From: Haplodiscus bocki
Lineage: Eukaryota
DNA length: 64,000 nucleotides
NCBI GenBank assembly: GCA_965655095.1
Contig: OZ296653.1
Location: 70,804,001-70,868,000, forward strand
Reading direction: 5' to 3'
The notes beneath the pieces are model-generated. The model ran no database searches, was not told where the DNA came from, and saw nothing but the letters and a program-made list of their open reading frames with translations. How positions within the stretch are numbered: the first letter of the stretch is position 1; every line of letters starts with the position of its first letter. Of this stretch, positions 38,031-61,367 are shown piece after piece. The translations under genes were made by a program, and so were the position numbers.

Positions 38031-39149
38031 TACTGCATTTCAACCTGATAACGAAAAAATAGCGGGGTTTTACATCAGGTGCAAATGTTTTGGCAGAAAG
38101 CCTCGCTCTTTTTTGGAACCGAAGTTTTTTTGCACTCGTCACCTTACGGATGACGCCGACTTGGGACGTTACCCAGCTTGTTAAAAAGATGTGTGGTTTC
38201 TAAAGTATCTCTGTGCTAGCCGGGCTTCTTGTTTGACATTCAAAACACAATTTTCAATTTCGAGATCGAATAGGCGTTCACTCGATTATTTCCAATCTTC
38301 ATATACTGTATTCTAATTAATTTCCGCAATATTAGTTATTTGACTGAAGCGAATTTTGGATTAGTTGCAATTAGATTTATTTGAGCAGCAACATCGTGAA
38401 ATAGATTAATGTGAATTGCTGGATGTGGCCGGCATTTACGTTGATCAGGAAAGTTATACCCATGAAGAGATGAGCGAGAAGCGTTGTACACTATTCACGA
38501 GCTACTTCAAATTATGATTTCTCATTAGTTCGTGCGTTGATTAGGTGAGAATATTGTTCGATGTGCAAGACCTGATGTACGCAACTCTGGCGACAGAGTC
38601 GAGATGTGCAATGATTTGGTTTAACGAAGAGGTGCTGACCGTGGAGATGATTTGGTACAACTTCCGACACAAACTTGGGAGTGTGTTCGTGGAGCCGGAA
38701 GAGGAGCTGCCCAAGCAGGTGTCCCCGCTCCTTCTGCCGGTGGCGGTGGAGACTGCGATCAGGATAAAGTTATCGCCTTCTGTGCAAGTAAATACCAATT
38801 ACTTTTTGTTTTACATCCTGACCAAATAAGGTCTTCGGTTTTTTTTCAGAGCTTATGTTCTTGTTGATTTCCAGAAAAAAACTACCCACAAAACTTGAAT
38901 CGAAATACCAGAAATATTCAAATTCCATTCAACTGCATTAGATAAAGAGAAAAATGTTCCGAGAAACCTTCAAATTGCTGACATCTGACTCCAGTGACGA
39001 CTGCGTGCTTGGAGGATCAGAGTGAGTCGATCAACTTTTCTTTGATTAACTGTTTTCCGGAAAAAAATTCCGATACAACTTCCTGCCGCCAGAAAAAAAG
39101 CAGAGGACAACGGCTGTGACTATGAACACCGGTATGTTTTCAACTGTTC

Positions 39150-42100
39150 AGAACAACACTGCCTGCTGAAGAAGAGGCGATTATTCGGCCAACCAGGAAG
39201 AGTGGGACCAACTGATGGCCAACAAGCCGCCTTGCTACCTTTTTAGCGCAGCAGCTACAGTAAACACGTAGATTGCTTCAGAATACACACTTTGGTAGAG
39301 AAATATCTTGAAAGATTTAACACTTGGTGCAAACTTTTCCAATTTAAAAAGCAACGAGGTAACAATCAAAAAGAAGACAACCAGCTCCAGCGATGGCACC
39401 CTTTCGCCAATGGGAACAAACTCGGCGGAAGAGTTAGTTTGAGAGAAAAATTCCTGGAAAAAGAAAATAAACCACGTTTACTGAAAAGTGTTATCGGATG
39501 ACTGTTCCAGGTGAACAAGTAAAGCGGTACCGAAAAAATCCAAAGTCACATCTACTGCCGCTTCCTACAAAACGAAGCGAAAGACGTGGGATCGTTAGAT
39601 TATTGAAACAGAAAAAACATAGTGAGACAAACTTAATTGAAATTTAAATGCTTTTGGAGCACTACAGTCGACTGTTTGATATGACTGAAGGACATTACCA
39701 AAAACAACACAAAGCGCCTTTCAAAAGACAAGCATTAGACATTTAGCCAAACCGACAAAAAGCTGAGCTGTTGCTTCAGTCTCTCCCAATAGTTTTCAAG
39801 TGGCAAAAAGCGACCGAAACTTGTTTCCACGATACTAGATTGCCGCAAAGTGTATGGGAGAAGAAATGATTAAAAACAGCACAGCGAAGAGTTAGTGAGA
39901 GTGACCAACAGAAGAGAGCTGATACTCTCAATGTTATATGTTGTTTCCTGCCGAATCCAATTGTTGGCAGTTTTCACTAGAAATTAATCCTGAGATAAAG
40001 TTCATCAAGTAACGACTCGCTCTGATTTTGCCTCAATTCGATACTTTTTTCAACAGATGCTGATGAACTCAGTGAATTTAACCATACTGCCAAGTTCAGC
40101 ACGCATCTGAGGAAGTATAAGGAGAACCGAAGGCGGTTGCGTGAACAGAACAAGGTGCTCAAAGGTACACGGAGAGCTAGCTGAACCTGCTTGAACGCCT
40201 TCAGTCGTTGATCAAACTTCCGCAAGGATTCACTGATATGACAGAGTTTCCTTCGATCATAGAGTCTCTAAAAACAATACACGCCCCCAAAGCCATCTGC
40301 ATGTAGCGCGAGGCATAATTGAGTTCGTTGACTTCCTCGTTGAGGATGTCGGTCCAGACGGCCCAAGCAAAAGGCAAAATGCCCCATCCTGCCATCTTGG
40401 AAGAAAATAGAGAAAAACATCGTCAGGTGTGGAAGATTACCGCGAAAACGGCAGTAAAAACAGAAAATACTCGACAGGTACGAGCAGCTAAACTACCGCC
40501 GAGCTTAAAACTGTGAAGGTAAAGCTGCTCAAGCTGTTGGAAGACTTGCTGGAGAAAGCCCTGAGGAGAGAACAGCCTCAACGAGGAGGATTAAAGGTTG
40601 GTAATAAAATGCCTTATCTGCGTACTTCCATTCAGAACACCCTGCCGCAGCTCAACGGCCATTCATGTCAAGTTAGAGGACAACCGTCAAATGGTGAAAA
40701 TAGCAGATATTCTCATCTTTGATTGAATCATCCTTCTGCAGTATTTGTTTTCTCGCTTCAGAGGTGAAAAGATGTCACAGACCATCCAGCCGATAACGGA
40801 ACAGATTACGGACACCAATAAGATCTATAGTAAGGAAGGGAGAAGGTTTTGATGCACTTTGACGAACCTGCAGCAACAAAAGTTAATGGATGTGGGCCAC
40901 ACTGTCGTTGTGAAGAGAACCAAAGACAAGACTGTGAAAAAACCGGACAAGAAATATCTCTACCATCCACTCATTAAGCTGAGTGAGAAACCCAACAGCC
41001 AGTCCCCGAAAAATTTCACTCGGGATATTCGCCGGACACTGAATAAGGAGACTATTTTTTACTCGACAGCATCCAGGAAGCGCATGCATGAAGCATTGAG
41101 TTGTCAAGTTGTCTAACGCAAAAGAAAATGTGGCCATCAACAAAGACAGGGGCCACATACAGCCAATTGTCCATGGCTTCCAAGAGGAAGTCAACAAGAA
41201 GTCTAAAGCGTTGTTGGTTTCCAACCTCATTGGTTAGGAGCTGAGAGCAAGTCACAAACAAACCACGCAAAGATTATGTGCAGTAAAATGGTTTTCGAAC
41301 ACTCTCACGAACTGTTTTGTTGTTCCACAGCGAAAACAAGGCAATAGAATGGCAGTCTTCTCCCTCAACCCTACCACAATCTTGAGTAACTGCTAATGTT
41401 CTTCACCACAATTTTGATACAAAATTTCCCTATTCCAGAACTTTGAGTTCGAAGCTGCTTTTGAGCAGTTCGTTTGGACCATAAGACGTTTCTTTTCATA
41501 AAAGTCACAAAACACGAAGCTTGAAAATTGAATATCGAAAATAATCGAAAAAAGATTTCAACACTCCCATCAATTATCTGCTTCTTTTAGCACAAAAAAT
41601 TGGCCTTGCAGAGGCCTTCTCATTCGTCCACTCTGCAACAACCTTCTGCAGCAGCTATTATCTCTGTACAAAGTTTCTGAAACGAATTTATCCAAAGTTC
41701 CTGGTAAATGTTTTTTGTGCTTGAGCTCCTCGCTTCCATGAATTGATTATAACTCCATAATTGCAATAAAAATATGCTTACGAACCGTTCACCAGCCGTC
41801 TTGATTGCCCACAAATTGCAAGTGCCGTTAGTTTATTTGTTTTTTCTGGCAATTTTCCTTTCAAAACGAATGTTTCTAACTTAATTACTTGTTCAGATTT
41901 CGATAACGACAACTCCGCGTGAGAAGACAACTCAGCAGCAAATGAAAGTGTTATTGAACGTCAGACAGAAAAAGGTGGTTGTATATTTAACGTTTCTCTT
42001 CGAAAGATATAGTACCGTTTTGTGTTTCAGTCGTTCCACTCCGTTTCTGAAAGTGGAGACGAAACTGTAAGTTTCTAGAACAGACATACATTCAAAGGAA

Positions 42101-43360
42101 TATGAAAACTTTCTTTTTCTCCTCGTTCTATTTCACTTCTATTATTTTTTTTCATATTCCATAACAGTAAACCAAAGAGCCCTCGAAGGAAGAAGAAGCG
42201 GACAGTGTACGTCAAAGGGAAAGACTAGGCATCAACAAAAAAATGGCTGAAGAAGTCGATCAAAAATTAAAAAATTGCAACCTCTGAATTTTACCATTTT
42301 TGAAGAAAAGCATTCAATTTTCATTCCAGTAAAAGCCAACTGAACCACGTTTAAGACGCTTGAGACGACAGCAGAGACGTTGAAAGATTAACTCTGCAAG
42401 AAGCGGGCACTTCGCCGACCAGGATCTGCTGCAGTACCTGATATTGTAATCAACTTGGTATCTGGGATGTTCCTCGTGGAAATGGAGCGGGCATTACATA
42501 CTTAAAGAAGCTCCAGACCGTTTCTGTCCTCAAGTGTGTGACAAACTGGCGAGGCATTAGTTCCGAAAGTTGAGAGAATGGAAGAAGAAAAAAATCGAGT
42601 CGGAAGGATGGTTTAAACGGGACATTCCTTTTCATGAACTGCTTGAACTAAAGATAAACCCTATAATTTTCAAGAACTCCACGCTCAAACATTTCATGTT
42701 TTCTTTTTTGTTCCTTTGAACGAGTGATCTACTGATAACATACCAATCGGAACATACTTCATTTTGTGCAGGAGAGACTGTTCGCCAAGGAAGTCTCTCA
42801 ACATCCGATGACATTAATATTGAGTTCATGAACCGGGACCGTGAAGGGATGCAGGTCCGGCTGATAGATGAGCAGAAGGGCCGGGGTCTTGATGCGACCA
42901 GAGCTTCGAAAAAGAAGAATTTCTCCTACTTTATAGAAGAAAACGACTCTTCAAAGAGGATTAAGAACAGCGATTGGCGGTTAGAAAAGACAAAACCCTA
43001 CTTTGTGAAATGTTCAAAAAATAAGGTCTTCAATATTCAAAAAAAATCAATAAGTACATACATCTACAAGGATCGGAGAGGGTCTTTGTACATCAACGCT
43101 TCAGACGAAGACGCAGGGCTGGCGCGCTTCATGAATGACAACATATACCTCAAAAAGTTACCGCCAAACCCTACCGGGACAAGAAGTTGGAGATTTTCGT
43201 CCCGAAAAAATTCGAAAGCTGTGCGATTCAAAAAATATATATTCTTTTCCAGCTGGCCCGCTTCACGTCAAGCTTGTTGCCCTGTGAGATATTCTCAAGG
43301 ACGACGAAGTTGTATACAATTATGAGGGCGACAATTTGTCTTCGCGAAAAAAGAACTATC
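39150..43360 (+). pseudogene. Array gene copy 1 (different or absent 5' exons): Zn-finger / tyrosine-recombinase-like / SET
   Basis: Same motifs as copy 2; SET region 42828-43350. Confidence 0.6.
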
Positions 43361-43540
43361 TCAAGTTACATTTTTCTCTTCGCTTATAAAGGAATATGAA
43401 ATGCAGTCTTTTAGGCCGCAGACGGGAATGATTCAGGATAACAGGTACGCTGATTATCTGAGACTATTGCGAGAAAATTGAAGTTGAAACTTACTCATTC
43501 TGCTTCGCAAGTCGTGATCTTTTGGAGGTTGATAAACACC

Positions 43541-46500
43541 ATGCCAACCGAGCACGTTTTAATTTCGAGCTCAACGTTAATTTCTCCCAACAAGGATTTG
43601 CCGCCGTCTGGGGACACTGAGTGAGTTTTTAGTGTAACCTTTTCGAGCCATAATCAGATAAATCCTTCAGAGTCTTTTTTGCTTAATGCCTAATTGTTTG
43701 GGTATACTGGGTTCCTTCTTATGGGAACACCGTTGAACTCACAGTCAGTCGAGTTGCGGCGAGCGATTGATTCCTAATGTTATTTCAGGGGATCGGAGAA
43801 GAATTCTGCGATTAATGATTTAATCAGAATCTATACAGGATCAAAGAATAGCTGTGTTTTGCCGATTGAGCAGGTGATTTAATTTCGCACAGTCTTTTCT
43901 ATATCCAAGAATGATCAGAAAACAAAGCTTGTTTCTTTTTGCAGTCAAATTACCCAATGCAAGAGGTGCTACTGCGGAGGAGAATCCGTGTGATCCTCCG
44001 CCTTTCTTGTTGTCTTCGGCCGAACTTCAGTGAGCTTCTTGTATCCTGTTTAAAGAGGCTTTATCACGCTCACCAGATAAGAAAACTGTTGTTCAGTCTG
44101 ACCTGTTCATTTTGTTATCTTCAGCCTTCTTTCAATTCATCAGATTACTCAAGAACTCGTCGTGTTCATGATAGAAGGAGCGTTTATTTCAATTTCAAAC
44201 TTTCAGGGGTTCGAGGAGTAATTCAACAGTTGACAATACTCCTCATGTCAACTTCCCCAATGATGGCGAAGTCTAGTTGTTTTTAATTCGTTGAGAAAGA
44301 GCTCTAAGTCTACACTACGCGTTTTTGACATCCATCAATTACTTAGAAATCTTGCGTTTCCATTTTCCAATGATAGAGACTAGCTGAAGTCAAAACACTG
44401 TCGGGGAAGCGCCCAATGCGATAGCAGTTGTTTGATTCTCCATCTTCGCTCGAACTTCAATGAGTTTTCTGCACCCTGCTCAAACACTCATCGTTTAAAT
44501 GTTCACAATAGTAAAACTTTGGAGCCTTTTCTCGTCTCTTCTTGAGGTAAAATGTGCCTTCTTATGGAATCACTAATCAAATCCCAATTAGTGGAATCCA
44601 AGGAAGGTTTGTTACAGAATTTTCAAGTTTCGGATAACTCGAAACAGTCAAAATGAGAGAAGTGAGATTCATCAAGACAGATAGCGCAGATAGCGAAGCA
44701 ACGGCTGAACGGGAAGACATTGACGACAGGTACAAGTTCAATAGGGTAAATTTCACTTTTCTGTAAAAAAAACGTATTTTTTCAGTCAATTCCCTAACCT
44801 CAGTGCGGAAGAGGACTCTGCTGTTAACGCACACAATCCCCCGCTGTCATCATGGAGCACGTGGAACTAGAGTCAAGAGTCTGAAGATCAGGTTATAGAG
44901 TTGGTGTTTTTGCAGCGTCACAGAGCCTTCCAATTCAAGTCAAGGATTCGAAGGCCGATGAATATTCTCGAGTCATCTGTGTTGGAGGACATTTCGACCT
45001 GCAACTCAGCAGCTAGAGGGTAATGATTTTCCTACCATGATTGGAGGGAAATCTTAATTTCGGGTTCAATTGTACAATTGATTTTTAGGGCAACCAAAAA
45101 CAGCCAGAAGACCCAGAGATAGGCAGTCGAAAAGGAAGGGTTAGTAGGAACAATTTAATTAAATTATTTGGAATCATTTACGGGATTAATGAAAAAAAAT
45201 CGACTTCAGAAATTCGAAGCAGAGCGCCGCGTGCAGAAGCCGACTACAGCAGAGGACAACATCATCGCCTCAGTTAGTCAATATGTCTCGACTCTGCTCC
45301 CAAAGAGGATGAATATTGAGTTCGTTTATTACCTTAATGGCTTTCTGAAACAATGGCTGTGACTAAGAACACCGGTATGTTTTCAACTGTTCAGAACAAC
45401 ACTGCCTGCTGAAGAAGAGGCGATTATTCGGCCAACCAGGAAGAGTGGGACCAACTGATGGCCAACAAGCCGCCTTGCTACCTTTTTAGCGCAGCAGCTA
45501 CAGTAAACACGTAGATTGCTTCAGAATACACACTTTGGTAGAGAGATATCTTGAAAGATTTAACACTTGGTGCAAACTTTTCCAATTTAAAAAGCAACGA
45601 GGTAACAATCAAAAAGAAGACAACCAGCTCCAGCGATGGCACCCTTTCGCCAATGGGAACAAACTCGGCGGAAGAGTTAGTTTGAGAGAAAAATTCCTGA
45701 AAAAAGAAAATAAACCACGTTTACTGAAAAGTGTTATCGGATGACTGTTCCAGGTGAGCAAGTAAAGCGGTACCGAAAAAAATCCAAAGTCACATCTACT
45801 GCCGCTTCCTACAAAACGAAGCGAAAGACGTGGGATCGTTAGATTATTGAAACAGAAAAAACATAGTGAGACAAACTTAATTGAAATTTAAATGCTTTTG
45901 GAGCACTACAGTCGACTGTTTGATATGACTGAAGGACATTACCAAAAACAACACAAAGCGTCTTTCAAAAGACAAGCATTAGACATTTAGCCAAACCGAC
46001 AAAAAGCTGAGCTGTTGCTTCAGTCTCTCCCAATAGTTTTCAAGTGGCAAAAAGCGACCGAAAATTGTTTCCACGATACTAGATTGCCGCAAAGTGTATG
46101 GGAGAAGAAATGATTAAAAACAGCGCAGCGAAGAGTAAGTGAGAGTGACCAACAGAAGAAAGCTGAAGCTCTCAATGTTATATGTTGTTTCCTGCCGAAT
46201 CCAATTGTTGGCAGTTTTCACTAGAAATTAATCCTGAGATAAAGTTCATCAAGTGACGACTCGCTCTGATTTTGCCTCAATTCGATACTTTTCTCAACAG
46301 ATGCTGATGAACTCAGTGAATTTAACAATACTGCCAAGTTCAGCACGCATCTGAGGAAGTATAAGGAGAACCGAAGGCGGTTGCGTGAACAGAACAAGGT
46401 GCTCAAAGGTACACGGAGAGCTAGCTGAACCTGCTTGAACGCCTTCAGTCGTTGATCAAACTTCCGCAAGGATTCACTGATATGACAGAGTTTCCTTCGA

Positions 46501-49500
46501 TCATAGAGTCTCTAAAAACAATACACGCCCCCAAAGCCATCTGCATGTAGCGCGAGGCATAATTGAGTTCGTTGACTTCCTCGTTGAGGATGTCGGTCCA
46601 GACGGCCCAAGCAAAAGGCAAAATGCCCCATCCTGCCATCTTGGAAGAAAATAGAGAAAAACATCGTCAGGTGTGGAAGATTACCGCGAAAACGGCAGTA
46701 AAAACAGAAAATACTCGACAGGTACGAGCAGCTAAACTACCGCCGAGCTTAAAACTCTGAAGGTAAAGCTGCTCAAGCTGTTGGAAGACTTGCTGGAGAA
46801 AGCCCTGAGGAGAGAACAGCCTCAACGAGGAGGATTAAAGGTTGGTAATAAAATGCCTTATCTGCGTATTTCCATTTCGAACACCCTGCCGCAGCTCAAC
46901 GGCCATTCACGTCAAGTTAGAGGACAACCGCCAAATGGTCAAAATCGCAGATAATCTCATCCCTGAGTGAATCATCCTTCTGCAGTTTTTGTTCTCTCGC
47001 TTCAGAGGTGAAAAGATGTCACAGACCATCCAGCGGATAACGGAACAGATGACGGACACCAATAAGATCTATAGTAAGGAAGGGAGAAGGTTTTGATGCA
47101 CTTTGATGAACATGCAGCTACAAAAGTTAATGGATGTGGGCCACACTGTCGTTGTGAAGAGAACCAAAGACAAGACTGTGAAAAAACCGGACAAGAAATA
47201 TCTCTATCATCCACTCATTAAGCTGAGTGAGAAACCCAACAGCCAGTCCCCGGAAAATTTCACTCGGGATATTCGCCGGACACTGAATAAAGAGACTATT
47301 TTTTACTCGACAGCATCCAGGAAGCGCATGCATAAAGCATTGAGTTGTCAAGTTGTCTAACGCAAAAGAAAATGTGGCCATCAACAAAGACAGGGGCCAC
47401 ATACAGCCAATTGTCCATGGCTTCCAAGAGGAAGTCAACAAGAAGTCTAAAGCGTTGTTGGTTTCCAACCTCATTGGTTAGGAGCTGAGAGCAAGTCACA
47501 AACAAACCACGCAAAGATTATGTGCAGTAAAATGGTTTTCGAACACTCTCACGAACTGTTTTGTTGTTCCACAGCGAAAACAAGGCAATAGAATGGCAGT
47601 CTTCTCCCTCAACCCTACCACAATCTTGAGTAACTGCTAATGTTCTTCACCACAATTTTGATACAAAATTTCCCTATTCCAGAACTTTGAGTTCGAAGCT
47701 GCTTTTGAGCAGTTCGTTTGGACCATAAGACGTTTCTTTTCATAAAAGTCACAAAACACGAAGCTTGAAAATTGAATATCGAAAATAATCGAAAAAAGAT
47801 TTCAACACTCCCATCAATTATCTGCTTCTTTTAGCACAAAAAATTGGCCTTGCAGAGGCCTTCTCATTCGTCCACTCTGCAACAACCTTCTGCAGCAGCT
47901 ATTATCTCTGTACAAAGTTTCTGAAACGAATTTATCCAAAGTTCCTGGTAAATGTTTTTTGTGCTTGAGCTCCTCGCTTCCATGAATTGATTATAACTCC
48001 ATAATTGCAATAAAAATATGCTTACGAACCGTTCACCAGCCGTCTTGATTGCCCACAAATTGCAAGTGCCGTTAGTTTATTTGTTTTTTCTGGCAATTTT
48101 CCTTTCAAAACGAATGTTTCTAACTTAATTACTTGTTCAGATTTCGATAACGACAACTCCGCGTGAGAAGACAACTCAGCAGCAAATGAAAGTGTTATTG
48201 AACGTCAGACAGAAAAAGGTGGTTGTATATTTAACGTTTCTCTTCGAAAGATATAGTACCGTTTTGTGTTTCAGTCGTTCCACTCCGTTTCTGAAAGTGG
48301 AGACGAAACTGTAAGTTTCTAGAACAGACATACATTCAAAGGAATATGAAAACTTTCTTTTTCTCCTCGTTCTATTCCACTTCTATTATTTTTTTTCATA
48401 TTCCATAACAGTAAACCAAAGAGCCCTCGAAGGAAGAAGAAGCGGACAGTGTACGTCAAAGGGAAAGACTAGGCATCAACAAAAAAATGGCTGAAGAAGT
48501 CGATCAAAAATTAAAAAATTGCAACCTCTGAATTTTACCATTTTTGAAGAAAAGCATTCAATTTTCATTCCAGTAAAAGCCAACTGAACCACGTTTAAGA
48601 CGCTTGAGACGACAGCAGAGACGTTGAAAGATTAACTCTGCAAGAAGCGGGCACTTCGCCGACCAGGATCTGCTGCAGTACCTGATATTGTAATCAACTT
48701 GGTATCTGGGAGGTTCCTCGTGGAAATGGAGCGGGCATTACGTACTTAAAGAAGCTCCAGACCGTTTCTGTCCTCAAGTGTGTGACAAACTGGCGAGGCG
48801 TCAGTTCCGAAAGTTGAGAGAATGGAAGAAGAAAAAAATCGAGTCGGAAGGATGGTTTAAACGGGACATTCCTTTTCATGAACTGCTTGAACTAAAGATA
48901 AACCCTATAATTTTCAAGAACTCCACGCTCAAACATTTCATGTTTTCTTTTTTGTTCCTTTGAACGAGTGATCTACTGATAACATACCAATCGGAACATA
49001 CTTCATTTTGTGCAGGAGAGACTGTTCGCCAAGGAAGTCTCTCAACATCCGATGACATTAATATTGAGTTCATGAACCGGGACCGTGAGGGGATGCAGGT
49101 CCGGCTGATAGATGAGCAGAAGGGCCGGGGTCTTGATGCGACCAGAGCTTCGAAAAAGAAGAATTTCTCCTATTTTATAGAAGAAAACGACTCTTCAAAG
49201 AGGATTAAGAACAGCGATTGGCGGTTAGAAAAGACAAAACCCTACTTTGTGAAATGTTCAGAAAATAAGGTCTTGAATATTCAAAAAAATCAATAAGTAC
49301 ATACATCTACAAGGATCGGAGAGGTTCTTTGTACATCAACGCTTCAGACGAAGACGCAGGGCTGGCGCGCTTCATGAATGACAACATATAACTCAAAATT
49401 TACCGCCAAACTCTACCGGGACAAGAACAGTTGGAGATTTTCGTCCCGAAAAATTTCGAAAGCTGTGCGATTAAAAAAATATATATTCTTTTCCAGCTGG

Positions 49501-49605: not shown

Positions 49606-49784
49606 CAAGTTACATTTTTTTCTTCGCTTATAAAAGAATATGAAATGCAGTCTTTTAGGCCGCAGACGGAAATGATTCAGAATAACAGGTACGCTGATTA
49701 TCTGAGACTATTGCGAGAAAATTGAAGTTGAAACTTACTCATTCTGCTTCGCAAGTCGTGATCTTTTGGAGGTTGATAAACAGC

Positions 49785-52700
49785 ATGCCAACCGAGCACG
49801 TTTTAATTTCGAGCTCAACGTTAAGTTCTCCCAACAAGGATTTGCCGCCGTCTGGGGACACTGAGTGAGTTTTTAGTGTAACCTTTTCGAGCCATAATCA
49901 GATAAATCCTTCAGAGTCTTTTTTGCTTAATGCTTAATTGTTTGGGTATATTGGGTTCCTTTTTATGGGAACACCGTTGAACTCACAGTCAGTCGAGTTG
50001 CGGCGAGCGATTGATTCCTAATGTTATTTCAGGGGATCGGAGAAGAATTCTGCGATTAATGATTTAATCAGAATCTATACAGGATCAAAGAATAGCTGTG
50101 TTTTGCCGATTGAGCAGGTGATTTAATTTCGCACAGTCTTTTCTATATCCAAGAATGATCAGAAAACAAAGCTTGTTTCTTTTTGCAGTCAAATTACCCA
50201 ATGCAAGAGGTGCTACTGCGGAGGAGAAACCGTGTGATCCTCCGCCTTTCTTGTTGTCTTCGGCCGAACTTCAGTGAGCTTCTTGTATCCTGTTTAAAGA
50301 GGCTTTATCACGCTCACCAGATAAGAAAACTGTTGTTCAGTCTGACCTGTTCATTTTGTTATCTTCAGCCTTCTTTCAATTCATCAGATTACTCAAGAAC
50401 TCGTCGTGTTCATGATAGAAGGAGCGTTTATTTCAATTTCAAACTTTCAGGGGTTCGAGGAGTAATTCAACAGTTGACAATACTCCTCATGTCAACTTCC
50501 CCAATGATGGCGAAGTCTAGTTGTTTTTAATTCGTTGAGAAAGAGCTCTAAGTCTACACTACGCGTTTTTGACATCCATCAATTACTTAGAAATCTTGCG
50601 TTTCCATTTTCCAATGATAGAGACTAGCTGAAGTCAAAACACTGTCGGGGAAGCGCCCAATGCGATAGCAGTTGTTTGATTCTCCATCTTCGCCCGAACT
50701 TCAGTGAGTTTTCTGCACCCTGCTCAAACACTCATCGTTTAAATGTTCACAATAGTAAAACTTCGGAGTCTTTTCTCGTCTCTTTTTGAGGTAAAATGTG
50801 CCTTCTTATGGAATCACTAATCAAATCCCAATTAGTGGGATCCAAGGAAGGTTTGTTACAGAATTTTCAAGTTTCGGATAACTCGAAACAGTCAAAATGA
50901 GAGAAGTGAGATTCATCAAGACAGATAGCGCAGATAGCGAAGCAACGGCTGAACGGGAAGACATTGACGACAGGTACAAGTTCAATAAGGTAAATTTCAT
51001 TTTTCTGTAAAAAAAACGTATTTTTTCAGTCAATTCCCTAACCTCAGTGCGGAAGAGGACTCTGCTGTTAACGCACACAATCCCCCGCTGTCATCATGGA
51101 GCACGTGGAACTAGAGTCAAGAGTTTGAAGATCAGGTTATAGAGTTGGTGTTTTTGCAGCGTCACAGAGCCTTCCAATTCAAGTCAAGGATTCGAAGGCC
51201 GATGAATATTCTCGAGTCATCTGTGTTGGAGGACATTTCGACCTGCAACTCAGCAGCTAGAGGTAATCATTTTCCTACCATGATTGGAGGGAAATCTTAA
51301 TTTCGGGTTCAATTGTACAATTGATTTTTAGGGCAACCAAAAACAGCCAGAAGACCCAGAGATAGGCAGTCGAAAAGGAAGGGTTAGTAGGAACAATTTA
51401 ATTAAATTATTTGGAATCATTTACGGGATTAATGAAAAAAAATCGACTTCAGAAATTCGAAGCAGAGCGCCGCGTGCAGAAGCCGACTACAGCAGAGGAC
51501 AACATCATCGCCTCAGTTAGTCAATATGTCTCGACTCTGCTCCCAAAGAGGATGAATATTGAGTTCGTTTATTACCTTAATGGCTTTCTGAAACAATGGC
51601 TGTGACTAAGAACACCGGTATGTTTTCAACTGTTCAGAACAACACTGCCTGCTGAAGAAGAGGCGATTATTCGGCCAACCAGGAAGAGTGGGACCAACTG
51701 ATGGCCAACAAGCCGCCTTGCTACCTTTTTAGCGCAGCAGCTACAGTAAACACGTAGATTGCTTCAGAATACACACTTTGGTAGAGAAATATCTTGAAAG
51801 ATTTAACACTTGGTGCAAACTTTTCCAATTTAAAAAGCAACGAGGTAACAATCAAAAAGAAGACAACCAGCTCCAGCGATGGCACCCTTTCGCCAATGGG
51901 AACAAACTCGGCGGAAGAGTTAGTTTGAGAGAAAAATTCCTGGAAAAAGAAAATAAACCACGTTTACTGAAAAGTGTTATCGGATGACTGTTCCAGGTGA
52001 ACAAGTAAAGCGGTACCGAAAAAAATCCAAAGTCACATCTACTGCCGCTTCCTACAAAACGAAGCGAAAGACGTGGGATCGTTAGATTATTGAAACAGAA
52101 AAAACATAGTGAGACAAACTTAATTGAAATTTAAATGCTTTTGGAGCACTACAGTCGACTGTTTGATATGACTGAAGGACATTACCAAAAACAACACAAA
52201 GCGCCTTTCAAAAGACAAGCATTAGACATTTAGCCAAACCGACAAAAAGCTGAGCTGTTGCTTCAGTCTCTCCCAATAGTTTTCAAGTGGCAAAAAGCGA
52301 CCGAAAATTGTTTCCACGATACTAGATTGCCGCAAATTGTATGGGAGAAGAAATGATTAAAAACAGCACAGCGAAGAGTAAGTGAGAGTGACCAACAGAA
52401 GAAAGCTGAAGCTCTCAATGTTATATGTTGTTTCCTGCCGAATCCAATTGTTGGCAGTTTTCACTAGAAATTAATCCTGAGATAAAGTTCATCAAGTGAC
52501 GACTCGCTCTGATTTTGCCTCAATTCGATACTTTTCTCAACAGATGCTGATGAACTCAGTGAATTTAACAATACTGCCAAGTTCAGCACGCATCTGAGGA
52601 AGTATAAGGAGAACCGAAGGCGGTTGCGTGAACAGAACAAGGTGCTCAAAGGTACACGGAGAGCTAGCTGAACCAGCTTGAACGCCTTCAGTCGTTGATC

Positions 52701-55700
52701 AAACTTCCGCAAGGATTCACTGATATGACAGAGTTTCCTTCGATCATAGAGTCTCTAAAAACAATAGACGCCCCCAAAGCCATCTGCATGTAGCGCGAGG
52801 CATAATTGAGTTCGTTGACTTCCTCGTTGAGGATGTCGGTCCAGACGGCCCAAACAAAAGGCAAAATGCCCCATCCTGCCATCTTGGAAGAAAATAGAGA
52901 AAAACATCGTCAGGTGTGGAAGATTACCGCGAAAACGGCAGTAAAAACAGAAAATACTCGACAGGTACGAGCAGCTAAACTACCGCCGAGCTTAAAACTC
53001 TGAAGGTAAAGCTGCTCAAGCTGTTGGAAGACTTGCTGGAGAAAGCCCTGAGGAGAGAACAGCCTCAACGAGGAGGATTAAAGGTTGGTAATAAAATGCC
53101 TTATCTGCGTACTTCCATTTCGAACACCCTGCCGCAGCTCAACGGCCATTCACGTCAAGTTAGAGGACAACCGCCAAATGGTCAAAATCGCAGATAATCT
53201 CATCCTTGATTGAATCATCCTTCTGCAGTATTTGTTTTCTCGCTTCAGAGGTGAAAAGATGTCACAGACCATCCAGCCGATAACGGAACAGATTACGGAC
53301 AACAATAAGATCTATAGTAAGGAAGGGAGAAGGTTTTGATGCACTTTGACGAACCTGCAGCTACAAAAGTTAATGGATGTGGCCCACACTGTCGTTGTGA
53401 AGAGAACCAAAGACAAGACTGTGAAAAAACCGGACAAGAAATATCTCTACCATCCACTCATTAAGCTGAGTGAGAAACCCAACAGCCAGTCCCCGAAAAA
53501 TTTCACTCGGGATATTCGCCGGACACTGAATAAGGAGACTATTTTTCACTCGACAGCATCCAGGAAGCGCATGCATAAAGCATTGAGTTGTCAAGTTGTC
53601 TAACGCAAAAGAAAATGTGGCCATCAACAAAGACAGGGGCCACATACAGCCAATTGTCCATGGCTTCCAAGAGGAAGTCAACAAGAAGTCTAAAGCGTTG
53701 TTGGTTTCCAACCTCATTGGTTAGGAGCTGAGAGCAAGTCACAAAGAAACCACGCAAAGATTAGGTGCAGTAAAATGGCTTTGGAACACTCTCACGAACT
53801 GTTTTGTTGTTCCACAGCGAAAACACGGCAATAGAATGGCAGTCTTCTCCCTCAACCCAACCACAATCTTGAGTAACTGCTAATGTTCTTCACCACAATT
53901 TTGATACAAAATTTCCCTATTCCAGAACTTTGAGTTCGAAACTGCTTTTGAGCAGTTCGTTTGGACCATAAGACGCTTCTTTTCATAAAAGTCACAAAAC
54001 ACGAAGCTTCAAAATTGAATATCGAAAATAATCGAAATAAGATTTCAACACTCCCATCAATTATCTGCTTCTTTTAGCACGAAAAAATGGCCCTGCAGAG
54101 GCCTTCTCATCCGTCCACTCTGCAACAACCTTCTGCAGCAGCTATTATCTCTCTACAAAGTTTCTGAAACGAATTTATCCAAAAATCCTGGTAAATGGTT
54201 TTTGTGCTTGAACTCCTCGCTTCCATGAATTGATTATAACTCCATAATTGCAATAAAAATATGCATACGAACCGTTCACCAGCCGTCTTGATTGCCCACA
54301 AATTGCAAGTGCCGTTAGTTTAATTGTTTTTTCCGGCAATTTTCCTTTCAAAACGAATGTTTCTAACTTAATTACTTGTTCAGATTTCGATGACGACAAC
54401 TCCGCGTGAGAAGACAACTCAGCAGCAAATGAAAGTGTTATTGAACGTCAGACAGAAAAAGGTGGTTGTATATTTAACGTTTTCCGAAAGATATAGTACC
54501 GTTTTGTGTTTCAGTCGTTCCACTCCGTTTCTGAAAGTGGAGACGAAACTGTAAGTTTCTAGAACAGACATACATTCAAAGGAATATGAAAACTTTCTTT
54601 TTCTCCTCGTTCTATTTCACTTCTATTATTTTTTTCATATTCCATAACAGTAAACCAAAGAGCCCTCGAAAGAAGAAGAAGCGGACAGTGTACGTCAAAG
54701 GGAAAGACTAGGCATCAACAAAAAATGGCTGAAGAAGTCGATCAAAAATTAAAAAATTGCAACCTCTGAATTTTACCAATTTTGAAGAAAAGCATTCAAT
54801 TTTCATTCCAGTAAAAGCCAACTGAACCACGTTTAAGACGCTTGAGACGACAGCAGAGACGTTGAAAGATTAACTCTGCAAGAAGCGGGCACTTCGCCGA
54901 CCAGGATCTGCTGCAGTACCTGATATTGTAATCAACTTGGTATCTGAGTTGTTCCTCGTGGAATTGGAGGGGCATTACGTACTTAAGGAAGCTCCAGACC
55001 GTTTCTGTCCTCAAGTGTGTGACAAACTGGCGAGGCGTCATTTCCGAAAGTTGAGAGAATGGAAGAAGAAAAAAATCGAGTCGGAAGGATGGTTTAAACG
55101 GGACATTCCTTTTCATGAACTGCTTGAACTAAAGATAAACGCTATAATTTTCAAGAACTCCACGCTCAAACATTTCATGTTTTCTTTTTTGTTGCTTCGA
55201 ACGAGCGATCTACTGATAACATACCAATCGGAACATACTTCATTTTGTGCAGGAGAGACTGTTCGCCAAGGAAGTCTCTCAACATCCGATGACATTAATA
55301 TTGAGTTCATGAACCGGGACCGTGAGGGGATGCAGGTCCGGCTGATAGATGAGCAGAAGGTCCGGGGTCTTGATGCGACCAGAGGTTCGAAAAAGAAGAA
55401 TTTCTCCTATTTTATAAAGAAAACGACTCTTCAAAGAGGATTAAGAAAAGCGATTGGCGGTTAGAAAAGACAAAACACTACTTTGTGAAATGTTCAAAAA
55501 ATAAGGTATTGAATATTCAAAAAAAATCAATCAGTACATACATCTACAAGGATCGGAGAGGGTCTTTGTACATCAACGCTTCAGACGAAGACGCGCTTCA
55601 TTAATGACAACATATAACTCAAAAAGTTACCGCCAAACCCTACCGGGACAAGAACAGTTGGAGATTTTCGTCCCGAAAAATTTCGAAAGCTGTGCGATTC

Positions 55701-55835
55701 AAAAAATATATATTCTTTTCCAGCTGGCCCTCTTCACGTCAAGCTTGTTGCGCTGCGAGATATTCTCAAGGACGACGAAGTTGTATACAATTATGAGGGC
55801 GACAATTTGTCTTCGCGAAAAAAGAACTATCTCAA
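49785..55835 (+). pseudogene. Array gene copy 3
   Basis: As copy 2. Has a small deletion removing part of GLAR in the SET domain (~55593) and a longer open frame 54937-55464. Confidence 0.62.
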
Positions 55836-56010
55836 GTTACATTTTTTCTTCGCTTATAAAAGAATATGAAATGCAGTCTTTTAGGCCGCAGACGGGAATG
55901 ATTCAGGATAACAGGTACGCTGTTTATCTGAGACTATTGCGAGAAAATTGAAGTTGAAACTTACTCATTCTGCTTCGCAAGTCGTGATCTTTTGGAGGTT
56001 GATAAACACC

Positions 56011-59000
56011 ATGCCAACCCAGCACGTTTTAATTTCGAGCTCAACGTTAGTTTCTCCCAACAAGGATTTGCCGCTGTCTGGGGACACTGAGTGAGTTTTT
56101 AGTGTAACCTTTTCGAGCCATAATCAGATAAATCCTTCAGAGTCTTTTTTGCTTAATGCTTAATTGTTTGGGTATATTGGGTTCCTTCTTATGGGAACAC
56201 CGTTGAACTCACAGTCAGTCGAGTTGCGACGAGCGATTGATTCCTAATGTTATTTCAGGGGATCGGAGAAGAATTCTGCGATTAATGATTTAATCAGAAT
56301 CTATACAGGATCAAAGAATAGCTGTGTTTTGCTGATTGAGCAGGTGATTTAATTTCGCACAGTCTTTTCTATATCCAACAATGATCAGAAAACAAAGCTT
56401 GTTTCTTTTTGCAGTCAAATTACCCAATGCAAAAGGTGCTACTGCGGAGGAGAATCCGTGTGATCCTCCGCCTTTCTTGTTGTCTTCGGCCGAACTTCAG
56501 TGAGTTTCTTGTATCCTGTTTAAAGAGGCTTTATCACGCTCACCAGATAAGAAAACTGTTGTTCAGTCTGACCTGTTCATTTTGTTATCTTCAGCCTTCT
56601 TTCAATTCATCAGATTACTCAAGAACTCGTTGTGTTCATGATAGAAGGAGCGTTTATTTCAATTTCAAACTTTCAGGGGTTCGAGGAGTAATTCAACAGT
56701 TGACAAAACTCCTCATGTCAACTTCCCCAATGATGGCGAAGTCTAGTTGTTTTTAATTCGTTGAGAAAGAGCTCTAAGTCTACACTACGCGTTTTTGACA
56801 TCCACCAATTACTTAGAAATCTTGTGCTTCCATTTTCCAATGATAGAGACTAGCTGAAGTCAAAACACTGTCGAGGAAGCGCCCAATGCGATAGCAGTTG
56901 TTTGATTCTCCATCTTCGCCCGAACTTCAGTGAGTTTTCTGCACCCTGCTCAAACACTCATCGTTTAAATGTTCACAATAGTAAAACTTCGGAGTCTTTT
57001 CTCGTCTCTTTTTGAGGTAAAATGTGCCTTCTTATGGAATCACTAATCAAATCCCAATTAGTGGGATCCAAGGAAGGTTTGTTACAGAATTTTCAAGTTT
57101 CGGATAACTCGAAACAGTCAAAATGAGAGAAGTGAGATTCATCAAGACAGATAGCGCAGATAGCGAAGCAACGGCTGAACGGGAAGACATTGACGACAGG
57201 TACAAGTTCAATAAGGTAAATTTCACTTTTCTGTAAAAAACGTATTTTTTCAGTCAATTCCATAACCTCAGTGCGGAAGAGGACTCTGCTGTTAACGCAA
57301 ACAATCCCCCGCTGTCACCAGGGAGCACGTGGAACTAGAGTCAAGAGTCTGAAGATCAGGTTATAGAGTTGGCGTTTTTGCAGCGTCACAGAGCCTTCCA
57401 ATTCAAGTCAAGGATTCGAAGGCCGATGAATATTCTCGAGTCATCTGTGTTGGAGGACATTTCGACCTGCAACTCAGCAGCTAGAGGGTAATCATTTTCC
57501 TACCATGATTGGAGGGAAACCTTAATTTCGGGTTCAATTGTACAATTGATTTTTAGGGCAACCAGTAACAGCCAGAAGACCCAGAGATAGGCAGTCGAAA
57601 AGGAAGGGTTAGTAGGAACATTTCAATTAGATTATTTGGAATCATTTACGGGATTAATGAAAAAAAAATCGACTTCAGAAATTCGAAGCAGAGCGCCGCG
57701 TGCAGAAGCCAACTACAGCAGAGGACAACATCATCGCCTCAGTTAGTCAATATGTCTCGACTCTGCTCCCAAAGAGGATGAATATTGAGTTCGTTTATTA
57801 CCTTAATGGCTTTCTGAAACAATGGCTGTGACTAAGAACACCGGTATGTTTTCAACTGTTCAGAACAACACTGCCTGCTGAAGAAGAGGCCATTATTCGG
57901 CCAACCAGGAAGAGTGGGACCAACTGATGGCCAACAAGCCGCCTTGCTACCTTTTTAGCGCAGCAGCTACAGTAAACACGTAGATTGCTTCAGAATACAC
58001 ACTTTGGTATAGAAATATCTTGAAAGATTTAACACTTGGTGCAAACTTTTCCAATTTAAAAAGCAACGAGGTAACAATCAAAAAGAAGACAACCAGCTCC
58101 AGCGATGGCACCCTTTCGCCAATGGGAACAAACTCGGCGGAAGAGTCAGTTTGAGAGAAAAATTCCTGGAAAAAGAAAATAAACCACGTTTACTGAAAAG
58201 TGTTATCGGATGACTGTTCCAGGTGAACAAGTAAAGCGGTACCGAAAAAAAATCCAAAGTCACATCTACTGCCGCTTACTACAAAACGAAGCGAAAGACG
58301 TGGGATCGTTAGATTATTGAAACAGAAAAAACATAGTGAGACAAACTTAATTGAAATTTAAATGCTTTTGCAGCACTACAGTCGACTGTTTGATATGACT
58401 GAAGGACATTACCAAAAACAACACAAAGCGTCTTTCAAAAGACAAGCATTAGACATTTAGCCAAACCGACAAAAAGCTGAGCTGTTGCTTCAGTCTCTCC
58501 CAATAGTTTTCAAGTGGCAAAAAGCGACCGAAAATTGTTTCCACGATACTAGATTGCCGCAAAGTGTATGGGAGAAGAAATGATTAAAAACAGCACAGCG
58601 AAGAGTAAGTGAGAGTGACCAACAGAAGAAAGCAGAAGCTCTCAATGTTATATGTTGTTTCCTGCCGAATCCAATTGTTGGCAGTTTTCACTAGAACTTA
58701 ATCCTAAGTTCATCAAGTAACGACTCGCTCTGATTCTGCCTCAATTCGATACTTTTTTCAACAGATGCTGATGAACTCAGTAAATTTAACCATACTGCCA
58801 AGTTCAGCACGCATCTGAGGAAGTATAAGGAGAACCGAAGGCGGTTGCGTGAACAAAACAAGGTGCTCAAAGGTACACGGAGAGCTAGCTGAACCTGCTT
58901 GAACGCCTTCAGTCGTTGATCAAACTTCCGCAAGGATTCACTGATATGACAGAGTTTCCTTCGATCATAGAGTCTCTAAAAACAATACACGCCCCCAAAG

Positions 59001-59697
59001 CCATCTGCATGTAGCGCGAGGCATAATTGAGTTCGTTGACTTCCTCGTTGAGGATGTCGGTCCAGACGGCCCAAACAAAAGGCAAAATGCCCCATCCTGC
59101 CATCTTGGAAGAAAATAGAGAAAAACATCGTCAGGTGTGGAAGATTACCGCGAAAACGGCAGTAAAAACAGAAAATACTCGACAGGTACGAGCAGCTAAA
59201 CTACCGCCGAGCTTAAAACTGTGAAGGTAAAGCTGCTCAAGCTGTTGGAAGACTTGCTGGAGAAAGCCCTGAGGAGAGAACAGCCCCAACGAGGAGGATT
59301 AAAGGTTGGTAATAAAATGCCTTATCTGCGTACTTCCATTTAGAACACCCTGCCGCAGCTCAACAGCCAATCATGTCAAGTTAGAGCACTGTTGCCAAAT
59401 GGTCAAAACGGCAGATAAAAGCAGCTAATTCCTCCTGCTTAAGCCCACCAAGTCCTTTGGCAGAAAGAAGTCAGTTTACCACCAAACACTTCACATACTG
59501 CTCCTGAACACTTCCCCTCCCAAAAAAATTCAGATGGATCAAAGCAGCTTTTATGTGATAAAGCCATTTTCAAAGTTGAATCTCATCGTTGATTGAATCA
59601 TCCTTCTGCAGTTTTTGTTTTATCGCTTCAGAGGTGAAAAATGTCACAGACCAACCAGCGGATAACGGAACAGATGACGGGCACCAATAAGATCTAT
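56011..59697 (+). pseudogene. Array gene copy 4, 3'-truncated within the YR-like region
   Basis: Similarity ends at ...aataagatctat (~59697). Contains ~160 bp (59417-59579) absent from copies 1-3. Confidence 0.55.
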
Positions 59698-61345: not shown

Positions 61346-61349
61346 AAAA

Positions 61350-61367
61350 TGGTGACAAGGGTGGGAT
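61350..61367 (+). promoter_or_regulatory. Primer binding site, tRNA-Leu-like
   Basis: TGGTGACAAGGGTGGGAT, 4 nt after the LTR end; resembles Leu-tRNA PBS sequences of the TGGTGxCAGxxGTGGGAT type. Confidence 0.7.

What the first reader, a model, noticed from the sequence alone, without database searches (positions are those of the whole stretch)
39099..59697. 20-kb head-to-tail array of a spliced Zn-finger / tyrosine-recombinase-like / SET8-like gene: candidate undescribed YR element
Seen: each 6.24-kb unit holds one multi-intron gene ending in a clear SET domain (KGRG..ATR, GLARFMND, LVALRDI..DEVVYNY). Upstream are C2H2-like remnants (HYQKQH, CRKVYGRRND), a core-binding-like helix (VARGIIEFVDFL) and YR-like motifs (PFRTPCRSS, STASRK, DRGH). 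No TIRs or LTRs seen. Knowledge: Crypton-type YR transposons have introns, lack TIRs and are thought to move via circles; SET8/KMT5A writes H4K20me1. Inference: a YR DNA element carrying its own histone methyltransferase, with the tandem form arising from circle multimers or unequal crossing-over. I could not locate the catalytic Tyr, and shared stops suggest amplification after decay.
Basis: partly seen in the sequence, partly recalled or inferred. Interest (0 to 1): 0.8.

Follow-up and report, generated by a model that had tools for sequence, protein, structure and literature searches.

The report
Dead tandem SET-recombinase transposon copies
The 20-kb array is four head-to-tail, already broken copies of a rare mobile-element gene that joins a histone-methyltransferase-like SET domain, zinc fingers and a tyrosine recombinase; the family is real and unusual, but this locus is an inactive relic.

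Summary
The array is real: window 39107-59697, period about 6243 bp, copies 97.5-98.2% identical. It continues 27 kb downstream, past an LTR-retrotransposon insertion, for 3.58 units in all.

Each unit holds decayed exons of one gene. The true order is SET, then zinc fingers, then tyrosine recombinase (YR), then a C-terminal exon.

The recombinase reading holds. Intact relatives give a confident model (pLDDT 85) whose top 50 PDB matches are all tyrosine recombinases or type IB topoisomerases (Z 10-12). Arg, His and Tyr are invariant.

The SET domain is closest to KMT5A, but its NHS histidine is Asp in all 12 members checked.

In another organism's assembly the family is a 7.8-kb dispersed repeat. 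It is 99.5% identical between contigs, has sharp ends and sits in (TAC)n microsatellites. That fits Repbase's microsatellite-targeting CryptonV group, which I could not compare directly.

The window copies are dead. They share seven stops and frameshifts, and Gln replaces the catalytic Tyr. The array edge is 6-9% diverged, so I favour growth and homogenisation by host recombination over circle multimers.

The scan has noted this family twice before, on other DNA of this genome.

The parts
39107..59697 (+). Head-to-tail array inside the window, 3.3 units of about 6243 bp. It resumes outside the window at C6:70890654-70892595, giving 3.58 units in all.
39107..42742 (+). Copy A. It is 5'-truncated: no SET exons and no linker exon. 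It holds zinc-finger remnants, the core-binding exon, the catalytic exon and the C-terminal exon.
42743..48986 (+). Copy B, a full unit in gene phase: SET exons, linker, zinc fingers, recombinase, C-terminal exon.
48987..55223 (+). Copy C, a full unit in gene phase.
55224..59697 (+). Copy D. It keeps 160 bp (59419-59578) that copies A-C have lost. It is cut at 59697 by an LTR-element insertion.
49040..49247 (+). SET exon 1 of copy C (KGRG motif). The equivalent in copy B is about 42796-43003.
49269..49388 (+). SET exon 2 of copy C (GLARFMND, with Asp where SET enzymes have the NHS His). It ends in a stop. Copy B equivalent: 43026-43145.
49496..49600 (+). SET exon 3 of copy C (LVALRDI..EVVYNY). 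Copy B: 43252-43356, with a TGA. Copy D: 55723-55827.
51444..51587 (+). Linker exon shared with the C11 paralog. Also at 45201-45344 and 57670-57813.
45937..46130 (+). Remnants of two C2H2-like zinc fingers (HYQKQH, CRKVYGRRND). Also at about 39693-39885, 52180-52372 and 58407-58600.
46330..46961 (+). Core-binding exon ending in the Arg-I motif (PFRTPCRSS). It has seven shared stops or frameshifts. Also at 40083-40699, 52573-53198 and 58791-59503.
46989..47478 (+). Catalytic exon: NKIY Lys, STASRK Arg-II, DRGH His. It has a frameshift. The Tyr column reads Gln at about 47425-47427. Also at 40745-41235 and 53232-53722. Copy D holds only 59579-59697.
48606..48860 (+). C-terminal exon (..LREWKK..G.F). 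Also at 42362-42499 and 54844-55086. The next SET exon follows within about 170 bp.
59698..64000 (+). Start of a 27-kb inserted block. It opens with an LTR retrotransposon: LTR 59698-61235, 99.7% identical to its partner 12.5 kb on; gag-like ORF 61931-63037. The block is flanked by GATCTA on both sides.

Best explanation
The array is a cluster of four head-to-tail, inactivated copies of a Crypton-type DNA transposon gene. In intact relatives this gene encodes one protein with four parts: an N-terminal KMT5A-like SET domain, two or more C2H2-like zinc fingers, a two-domain tyrosine recombinase, and a short conserved C-terminal module.

Inferred mechanism for active members. The recombinase excises the element and integrates it site-specifically into (TAC)n microsatellites. 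The zinc fingers and SET domain probably help in target or chromatin recognition, or mark chromatin at the element.

At this locus the gene is dead. I think a resident copy, or a pair of copies, was multiplied and kept similar by the host's own unequal crossing-over and gene conversion. Later an LTR retrotransposon split the last copy.

Shown: the array, the homology, the fold, the conserved catalytic residues in relatives, the mobility signature in a relative, and the decay here. Inferred: the transposition mechanism, the role of SET, and how the array grew.
For: Array and phase:
- define the array and its phase.
- SET exons lie 2-3 kb upstream of the recombinase exons on the same strand at C485, C57, C7, C9, C12, C2 and C11.

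Fusion:
- Full-length predicted proteins P0007 (1124 aa, one intronless ORF at L038:6172-9606) and P0015 (1367 aa) carry Pfam SET at the N-terminus (E about 1e-14).
- The same proteins carry the recombinase-like domain at the C-terminus.

Recombinase:
- The 19-sequence alignment A4 has invariant R335, H361 and Y370, and near-invariant K255.
- The AlphaFold model has pLDDT 85.1 and pTM 0.73.
- All top 50 Foldseek PDB hits are XerH, Cre, XerA, TelA, lambda Int, Flp or topoisomerase IB, with probability about 1.0.
- VIA Z is 10-12.4 with 250-290 residues aligned; Cre aligns at 4.6 A over 275 residues.
- Phage_integrase is the only Pfam family hit by more than one member: 4 of 19, best E 2e-4.
- The best PDB profile hit is XerA, in register.

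SET:
- The 14 best PDB sequence hits are KMT5A/SETD8, E about 1e-8.

Mobility in a relative:
- The P0016 cluster has 14 members above 90% identity. All five I looked up lie on different contigs of one ENA sample.
- L040:3861-11678 matches L041:3862-11678 at 99.55%, with unrelated flanks.
- The ends lie in (TAC)n, with an imperfect 23-bp terminal inverted repeat.
- A second related element follows head to tail in L042.
- No reverse transcriptase lies inside the element.

Selection:
- dN/dS is 0.05-0.21 between intact paralogs.

Decay here:
- Seven identical stops in all four copies.
- A frameshift in the catalytic exon, and Gln in the Tyr column.

Array history:
- Copy D is 99% identical to the others at its 5' end and falls to about 91% at the 3' edge.
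- Copies A-C share a 160-bp deletion.
- Arrays of partial units exist elsewhere: C2:13161417-13173804 with a 4.29-kb period and SET exons only, and C1:8762015-8794951.
Against: - No copy of this particular 6.24-kb unit exists elsewhere in the genome, apart from the split-off piece. The nearest paralog (C11) is only about 66% identical in DNA and lacks SET exons within 20 kb. Mobility of this lineage is therefore inferred from relatives.
- No (TAC)n, terminal repeats or target duplications are found at the array ends or unit junctions.
- The dispersed paralogs in this genome carry a 5' tandem-repeat region of about 365 bp period and a 3' satellite of about 180 bp. The window unit has neither.
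- The paralogs are old (35-50% amino-acid identity), have introns and are under purifying selection. That also fits a host gene family.
- His-II of the recombinase pentad is Ser/Thr, and the SET NHS His is Asp. Neither enzymatic activity is proven.
- No profile similarity to a resident CryptonA recombinase.
Confidence: 0.7

Rival explanations
1. Host gene family. The SET-zinc-finger-recombinase genes of this genome would be domesticated or never-mobile 'KMT5A-like' chromatin genes that expand by ordinary tandem and segmental duplication. The window array would simply be a set of duplicated pseudogenes of such a gene.
For: - Canonical GT-AG introns at conserved positions in paralogs.
- dN/dS of 0.05-0.21 over long divergence.
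- Paralogs only 35-50% identical, with no near-identical dispersed copies found in this genome.
- Local clusters on C2, C11, C1 and C397.
- A paper treats expanded N-terminal-SET KMT5A-like genes of Hydractinia, Hydra and sea urchin as embryonically activated host genes (PMC10368294). I did not show that those genes are this family.
Against: - In another organism the same architecture is a 7.8-kb dispersed repeat at 99.5% identity, with sharp ends in (TAC)n and unrelated flanks.
- Many copies in this genome are riddled with stops.
- The family is very rare and patchy: 47 representatives among 1.84 billion.
- The full catalytic Arg/Lys/Arg/His/Tyr set is conserved, which a domesticated DNA-binding remnant such as DUF3504 usually loses (PMC3212892).
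Confidence: 0.15
2. The head-to-tail array was created by the recombinase itself, either by integration of a circular multimer or by repeated integration of circles at the junction of a resident copy.
For: - The array's right end (unit position 3637, equivalent to window 48986) falls 23 bp after the C-terminal reading frame closes. The next SET exon starts within about 90 bp, so the unit is essentially the gene with no spacer.
- The total is a non-integer 3.58 units, as expected for whole elements plus one 5'-truncated copy.
- In the active relative two elements sit head to tail, sharing a TAC junction (L042).
Against: - All four copies share the same seven stops and the frameshifts. Either a dead template was copied or conversion spread the defects.
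- Divergence is graded, about 1% at copy D's 5' end rising to about 9% at the 3' edge, not star-like.
- No microsatellite, terminal inverted repeat or subterminal repeats at the unit junction.
- Partial-unit arrays of the same family elsewhere show that host duplication acts on these loci.
Confidence: 0.12
3. Assembly artefact: one copy wrongly expanded into several.
For: None specific. Tandem repeats of 6 kb are a known assembly hazard.
Against: - Copies differ by 1-2.5%, by private indels (an 11-bp and a 17-bp length difference in copy 3) and by the 160-bp segment private to copy D.
- Independent short-read contigs from two samples carry the variant letters of the other copies. Depth is about 2-2.6 times that of the unique segment.
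Confidence: 0.02

Closest known systems
CryptonV (Repbase group; Kapitonov and Jurka, Repbase Reports 2012, cited in PMC8869645)
   Same: [quoted passage not shown] The active relative found here sits in (TAC)n on both sides. Earlier notes of this scan report (AGT)n/(TAG)n targets, the same repeat on the other strand or in another register, in this genome.
   Different: I could not obtain any CryptonV sequence or its protein description. Sequence membership, and whether CryptonV is known to carry SET, are both untested. The window copies have no microsatellite flanks and are dead.
CryptonA / DUF3504 elements (Kojima and Jurka 2011, PMC3212892)
   Same: YR-only DNA transposons of animals with no terminal repeats. 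They may contain introns.
   Different: No profile similarity to a resident, apparently young CryptonA family: hhalign probability 0.1-0.2. CryptonA proteins have no SET or zinc-finger part. Here His-II is Ser/Thr.
KMT5A / SETD8 / PR-Set7 (H4K20 mono-methyltransferase)
   Same: It is the best PDB sequence match of the family's SET domain. The ELxYDY tyrosines are kept.
   Different: SET is N-terminal rather than C-terminal. The NHS His is Asp in 12 of 12 members. SET is fused to a recombinase. Activity and substrate are unknown.
Expanded 'KMT5A-like' genes with N-terminal SET in Hydractinia, Hydra and sea urchin (PMC10368294)
   Same: N-terminal SETD8-type SET plus a long conserved C-terminal part, in many divergent copies per genome.
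   Different: The paper mentions no recombinase or transposon nature for them. I could not fetch those proteins, so identity with this family is a lead only.
SETMAR (primate SET + mariner transposase fusion)
   Same: A SET domain joined to a transposition enzyme in one protein.
   Different: SETMAR, from my own knowledge, is a host gene that captured a DDD transposase. Here the fusion is carried by the element itself and the enzyme is a tyrosine recombinase.

Membership tests
Tyrosine recombinase / type IB topoisomerase superfamily | Two-domain fold: helical core-binding domain plus catalytic domain | tested here: met
   Model of P0007:555-966 has pLDDT 85. The top 50 Foldseek hits are all from this superfamily. 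Z is 10-12.4 over 250-290 residues spanning both domains. Tested on an intact relative. The window exons are homologous to it by tblastn: E 1e-25 for the core-binding exon and 1e-15 for the catalytic exon.
Tyrosine recombinase / type IB topoisomerase superfamily | Catalytic residues Arg-I, Lys, His-II, Arg-II, His/Trp-III and the Tyr nucleophile | tested here: inconclusive
   Across the family, Arg-II, His-III and Tyr are invariant, Lys is near-invariant and Arg-I is conserved. His-II is Ser/Thr. In the window copies Tyr is Gln and the exon is frameshifted, so the feature is not met in the window itself.
Tyrosine recombinase / type IB topoisomerase superfamily | Match to Pfam Phage_integrase (PF00589) above the curated cut-off | tested here: not met
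   Only 4 of 19 members match, best E 2e-4. No hit at E<=0.01 for 10 proteins with the domain, nine of them long models. The PDB profile hit to XerA has E 0.11.
Crypton (YR DNA transposon) | Element encodes a tyrosine recombinase but no reverse transcriptase, and has no LTRs | tested here: met
   The 7.8-kb repeat L040:3861-11678 contains only the SET, 182-aa and 738-aa ORFs plus small ORFs. No RVT hit lies inside it. The window unit has no LTR or terminal inverted repeat.
Crypton (YR DNA transposon) | Dispersed copies with defined, shared ends in unrelated flanks | tested here: inconclusive
   Met for the relative in ENA sample ERZ25074608. Not met for the window's own unit, which occurs only at this locus.
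Crypton (YR DNA transposon) | Sequence relatedness of the recombinase to described Crypton recombinases (CryptonA/DUF3504) | tested here: not met
   hhalign of A4 against four resident DUF3504 copies, and against a 430-aa CryptonA ORF, gives probability 0.1-0.2. The templates have low diversity, so this is a weak test.
CryptonV (Repbase) | Target-specific insertion into microsatellites | tested here: inconclusive
   (TAC)n lies on both sides of the element in L039, L040, L041 and L043. No (TAC)n or (GTA)n is found in the window or in eight paralog loci of this genome.
CryptonV (Repbase) | Sequence similarity to Repbase CryptonV consensus proteins | not testable with these tools
   Repbase Reports and its sequences are not held. 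Only the citation in PMC8869645 was read.
SET-domain lysine methyltransferase, KMT5A-like | SET domain (Pfam PF00856) closest to KMT5A | tested here: met
   P0007 and P0015 match with E about 1e-14. The 14 best PDB hits are KMT5A/SETD8. The last SET exon of the window reaches only E 0.027-0.05, below the cut-off.
SET-domain lysine methyltransferase, KMT5A-like | Intact cofactor-pocket NHS/C motif | tested here: not met
   The motif reads GLARY(I/M)ND in 12 of 12 family members and RFMND in the window. KMT5A has RLINHS in the aligned position.

The most novel reading that the evidence does not exclude
SET-zinc-finger-recombinase elements would be a separate, essentially unpublished clade of eukaryotic tyrosine-recombinase transposons. 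They would write or read a chromatin mark at their own (micro)satellite targets through a variant ND-type SET domain. Many 'expanded KMT5A-like methyltransferase genes' annotated in invertebrate genomes would then be their proteins. Recurrent head-to-tail arrays such as this one would be a footprint of recombinase-mediated integration next to resident copies.
Probability: 0.15. Interest if true: 0.75.

Novelty: new member of a known kind. Interest (0 to 1): 0.4.

Why it matters
This locus is a relic and matters little on its own. The family behind it is worth noting for three reasons.

- It is one of very few cases where a eukaryotic transposon carries a histone-methyltransferase-type domain fused to its own recombinase.
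- It targets simple repeats.
- It is so rare in sequence databases (47 cluster representatives among 1.84 billion) that standard domain scans see only 'SET'. Genome annotations may therefore list such transposon proteins as extra KMT5A-like chromatin enzymes, which could mislead studies of H4K20 methylation in invertebrates.

The window also gives a clean example of concerted evolution in a tandem array of a dead element.

Tried and rejected
- Pfam on ten stop-free window exons: only a sub-threshold SET hit on the last SET exon.
- phmmer of the window SET exon 1 against PDB: nothing.
- Profile of the core-binding exon (A2) against PDB: no recombinase hit, only chance-level rows.
- Pfam on paralog exons: chance hits only.
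- The search for homologous proteins with P0007 residues 560-960: six unnamed ENA proteins, so no names or taxa.
- The listing of cluster members: no names.
- The look-up of sequencing runs: organism coded, no RNA run.
- Exact search of this genome for the relative's terminus motif next to (TAC)4: no match.
- Search for (TAC)n/(GTA)n in the window and eight paralog loci: none.
- Search for the paralogs' 5' repeat and 3' satellite in the window: none, and the two are not the same repeat.
- The P0016 lineage is not present at high identity in this genome.
- Literature searches for SET plus tyrosine recombinase plus transposon found only general reviews.
- I considered vertebrate DUF3504 genes as an explanation for the PF12012 hits. 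I rejected it because the copies are 96-98% identical to each other.
- The spliced (joined-exon) protein of the window gene or of its paralogs was not built or searched.
Full report
**1. The observation**

Self-comparison of the window shows a head-to-tail array from 39107 with a period of 6243-6244 bp (6226 for the third unit). Identity between units is 98.2, 97.7 and 97.5%. The window contains no N.

The last unit carries 160 bases (59419-59578) that the other three lack.

A search of the whole genome (1.5 Gb; the window is C6:70804001-70868000) finds one more piece of the unit. It lies 27 kb downstream at C6:70890654-70892595, is 94% identical, and covers unit positions 1716-3637.

That piece begins where copy 4 stops, and the hexamer GATCTA is present on both sides. 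The intervening block starts with an LTR retrotransposon whose 1538-bp LTRs are 99.7% identical. It has a gag-like ORF at 61931-63037. So the last copy was split by a later insertion, and the array is 3.58 units long.

Short-read contigs of two samples reproduce the copy-4-specific segment without a difference. Array-internal contigs are at about 2-2.6 times its depth. The array is therefore not an assembly error.

**2. Gene order**

The SET-like exons and the putative recombinase exons were used separately as queries on the genome. They gave about 33 and about 70 matches.

At C485, C57, C7, C9, C12, C2 and C11 the SET exons lie 2-3 kb upstream of the recombinase exons on the same strand. Intact-looking paralogs fetched from eight loci share one exon plan:
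- SET exons 1-3
- an acidic/serine-rich linker
- an exon with two C2H2-like fingers
- an exon of about 240 aa ending in ..RNACRxSSAIyI..EH
- an exon of about 165 aa with NKNY..EG, FNSTxYRKK.QT and GHxxxTxxxY
- an exon of about 85 aa at the C-terminus

The introns have canonical GT-AG ends.

Mapping these exons on the window gives, for the second full unit:
- SET 49040-49600
- linker 51444-51587
- finger remnants 52180-52372
- core-binding exon 52573-53198
- catalytic exon 53232-53722
- C-terminal exon 54844-55086

The gene starts with SET.

Only about 170 bp or less separates the end of one gene copy from the SET exon of the next.

Every search was made exon by exon by reference.

**3. Is the middle part a tyrosine recombinase?**

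Pfam sees nothing in the window exons or in the paralog exons.

A profile of six intact catalytic exons (A3) was searched against 1.84 billion cluster representatives. It found only 47 proteins at E<=0.001, all unnamed ENA predictions.

Two full-length models have a Pfam SET domain at the N-terminus (E about 1e-14) and the A3 domain near the C-terminus. They are P0007 (1124 aa) and P0015 (1367 aa). P0007 is a single intronless ORF (L038:6172-9606). So the fusion is not a gene-prediction accident of this genome.

In a 19-sequence alignment of the region (A4), the only invariant columns are an Arg, a His and a Tyr. These sit in the positions of Arg-II, His-III and the nucleophile. The hairpin Lys is near-invariant and Arg-I is conserved. 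His-II is Ser or Thr.

Structural evidence:
- AlphaFold2 on A4 gave a confident model: mean pLDDT 85.1, pTM 0.73.
- Its 50 best Foldseek matches in the PDB are XerH, Cre, XerA, TelA, lambda integrase, Flp, topoisomerase IB or a mycobacteriophage integrase. All have probability about 1.0, although the best E is only 2.8e-3.
- Re-alignment gave Z 10-12.4 with 250-290 residues across both domains. Cre aligns at 4.6 A over 275 residues.

Sequence-level support:
- Phage_integrase is the only Pfam family hit by more than one A4 member: 4 of 19, best E 2e-4.
- The best PDB profile hit of the catalytic exon is XerA, with GH and Y in register, E 0.11.

I conclude that the family has the tyrosine-recombinase fold and a near-complete active site.

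The window exons are homologous to it: tblastn E 1e-25 for the core-binding exon and 1e-15 for the catalytic exon.
- VARGIIEF: core-binding domain
- PFRTPCRSS: Arg-I
- STASRK: Arg-II
- DRGH: His-III

**4. The SET domain**

The SET region of P0007 matches KMT5A/SETD8 chains first (14 best rows, E about 1e-8), ahead of MLL, SET1 and EZH2.

In all 12 family members inspected, and in the window, the NHS/C motif reads ND (GLARY(I/M)ND). The YDY tyrosines are kept. The substitution is conserved, so it is a family trait rather than decay. Methyltransferase activity is therefore unproven.

**5. Transposon or host gene?**

The cluster of P0016 has 14 members above 90% identity. The five I looked up all lie in one ENA sample on different contigs.

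- DNA comparison shows a 7.8-kb unit, L040:3861-11678 matching L041:3862-11678 at 99.55%. The same ends occur in L039, and the flanks are unrelated and LINE-rich.
- The body starts TGTAGCCAGACTCTGAAAAAGG and ends CCTTTTTCGGACCGAGACTACAG. This is an imperfect 23-bp inverted repeat.
- (TAC)n lies on both sides.
- In L042 a second, related element follows head to tail across ..GACTAC|TAG|TGTAGCC...
- No reverse transcriptase lies inside the unit.

This is the signature of a site-specific DNA transposon.

A paper by Kojima states that some CryptonV families are inserted specifically in microsatellites (PMC8869645). It describes CryptonV as a YR-encoding DNA transposon lineage, reported from cnidarians in Repbase Reports 2012. 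I could not obtain those sequences, so membership is likely but untested.

A resident CryptonA family (DUF3504, copies 96-98% identical) shows no profile similarity to A4.

This scan has already reported the same kind of element twice on other DNA of this genome, with (TAG)n/(AGT)n targets. My (TAC)n result is the same repeat read on the other strand, and I reached it before reading those notes.

Within this genome the picture is older:
- Paralogs are 35-50% identical in protein.
- About a dozen have open core-binding exons and many are full of stops.
- dN/dS between intact pairs is 0.05-0.21.

Purifying selection fits both active element lineages and domesticated genes. That is the main rival reading.

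A PLoS Genetics paper describes many divergent KMT5A-like genes in Hydractinia, Hydra and sea urchin, with N-terminal SET and a conserved long C-terminal part. It treats them as host genes and does not mention a recombinase (PMC10368294). They may be this family. I could not test that.

**6. State and history of the window array**

All four copies share the same seven stops in the core-binding exon reading. Individual SET exons carry further stops.

Identity of copy D to the others is 99% in its first 800 bp and falls to about 91% in the last 600 bp of the array. Copies A-C are 98-100% alike along most of the unit and share the 160-bp deletion.

That graded, mosaic pattern with a diverged edge is what unequal crossing-over and gene conversion produce in an old array. 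It also means that shared stops could have been spread by conversion, and do not by themselves prove amplification after decay.

Points in favour of a recombinase-made array:
- The right end falls 23 bp after the C-terminal frame closes.
- The unit has no spacer.
- The number of units is not an integer.

Points against:
- There is no microsatellite or terminal repeat at the junctions.
- The 5' tandem-repeat region and 3' 180-bp satellite that flank the dispersed paralogs are absent.
- Arrays of partial units of the same family exist elsewhere: a 4.29-kb SET-only period on C2 and partial core-binding units on C1.

I therefore favour host recombination. I put it at about 0.6 against 0.12-0.2 for a recombinase-made array.

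The nearest paralog (C11:81646574) has the linker, fingers, recombinase and C-terminal exons but no SET within 20 kb.

**7. Verdict**

The element is probably not undescribed, and the locus is an inactive, host-amplified relic.

Novelty: a new member of a known kind, Crypton-type and probably CryptonV. The SET fusion is little documented in the literature I could search.

Interest is moderate. It rests on the family rather than on this array.

Noticed in passing
window 59698-64000 and on to C6:70890653: A 27-kb inserted block splits the last array copy. It is bounded by TG..CA and a GATCTA duplication. It starts with a 14-kb LTR retrotransposon (LTRs 1538 bp, 99.7% identical; gag-like ORF 61931-63037). 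The family is highly repeated, with contig depth in the thousands.
   Followed up: partly
L030:1-3557, L031:1-3319, L032:13-3420, L036:1-2009, L037:1-1158: A satellite of about 180 bp abuts the 3' end of most dispersed SET-recombinase paralogs, within a few codons of the stop in L032. A different tandem repeat of about 365 bp lies upstream of their SET exon and is better conserved than the coding sequence. These could be subterminal parts of the element or its preferred target.
   Followed up: partly
L044-L047 (C3:73251082, C10:29324901, C7:83584639, C10:83037448): A separate, apparently young CryptonA family. Its DUF3504 regions are 96-98% identical on different chromosomes. One 430-aa ORF has an intact HxxR...GH...Y.
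   Followed up: partly
G000 C2:13161417-13173804; C1:8762015-8794951; C397; C11:82136291-82173556: Other local arrays of partial units of the same family: a SET-only 4.29-kb period on C2, and N-terminal core-binding pieces every 5-6 kb on C1.
   Followed up: no
L042:11600-16617: In the other organism two related elements lie head to tail, joined across TAC|TAG. The second encodes a 1094-aa SET-containing ORF.
   Followed up: partly
L038:1-19606: The intronless 1144-aa SET-recombinase ORF of P0007 sits between short satellites (173-177 bp and 350 bp). It lies inside a 12.3-kb repeated block whose 438-aa ORF is cut off at the upstream side of the element.
   Followed up: partly
L035:524-1922: The C11:821 paralog is broken downstream by foreign DNA carrying ORFs of 241 and 187 aa. 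The first has a GPSECGKS P-loop. It was not identified.
   Followed up: no
window 25875-26762: Tandem repeats of 59 bp (2.9 copies) and 69 bp (6.2 copies), in a GC-richer stretch upstream of the array.
   Followed up: no
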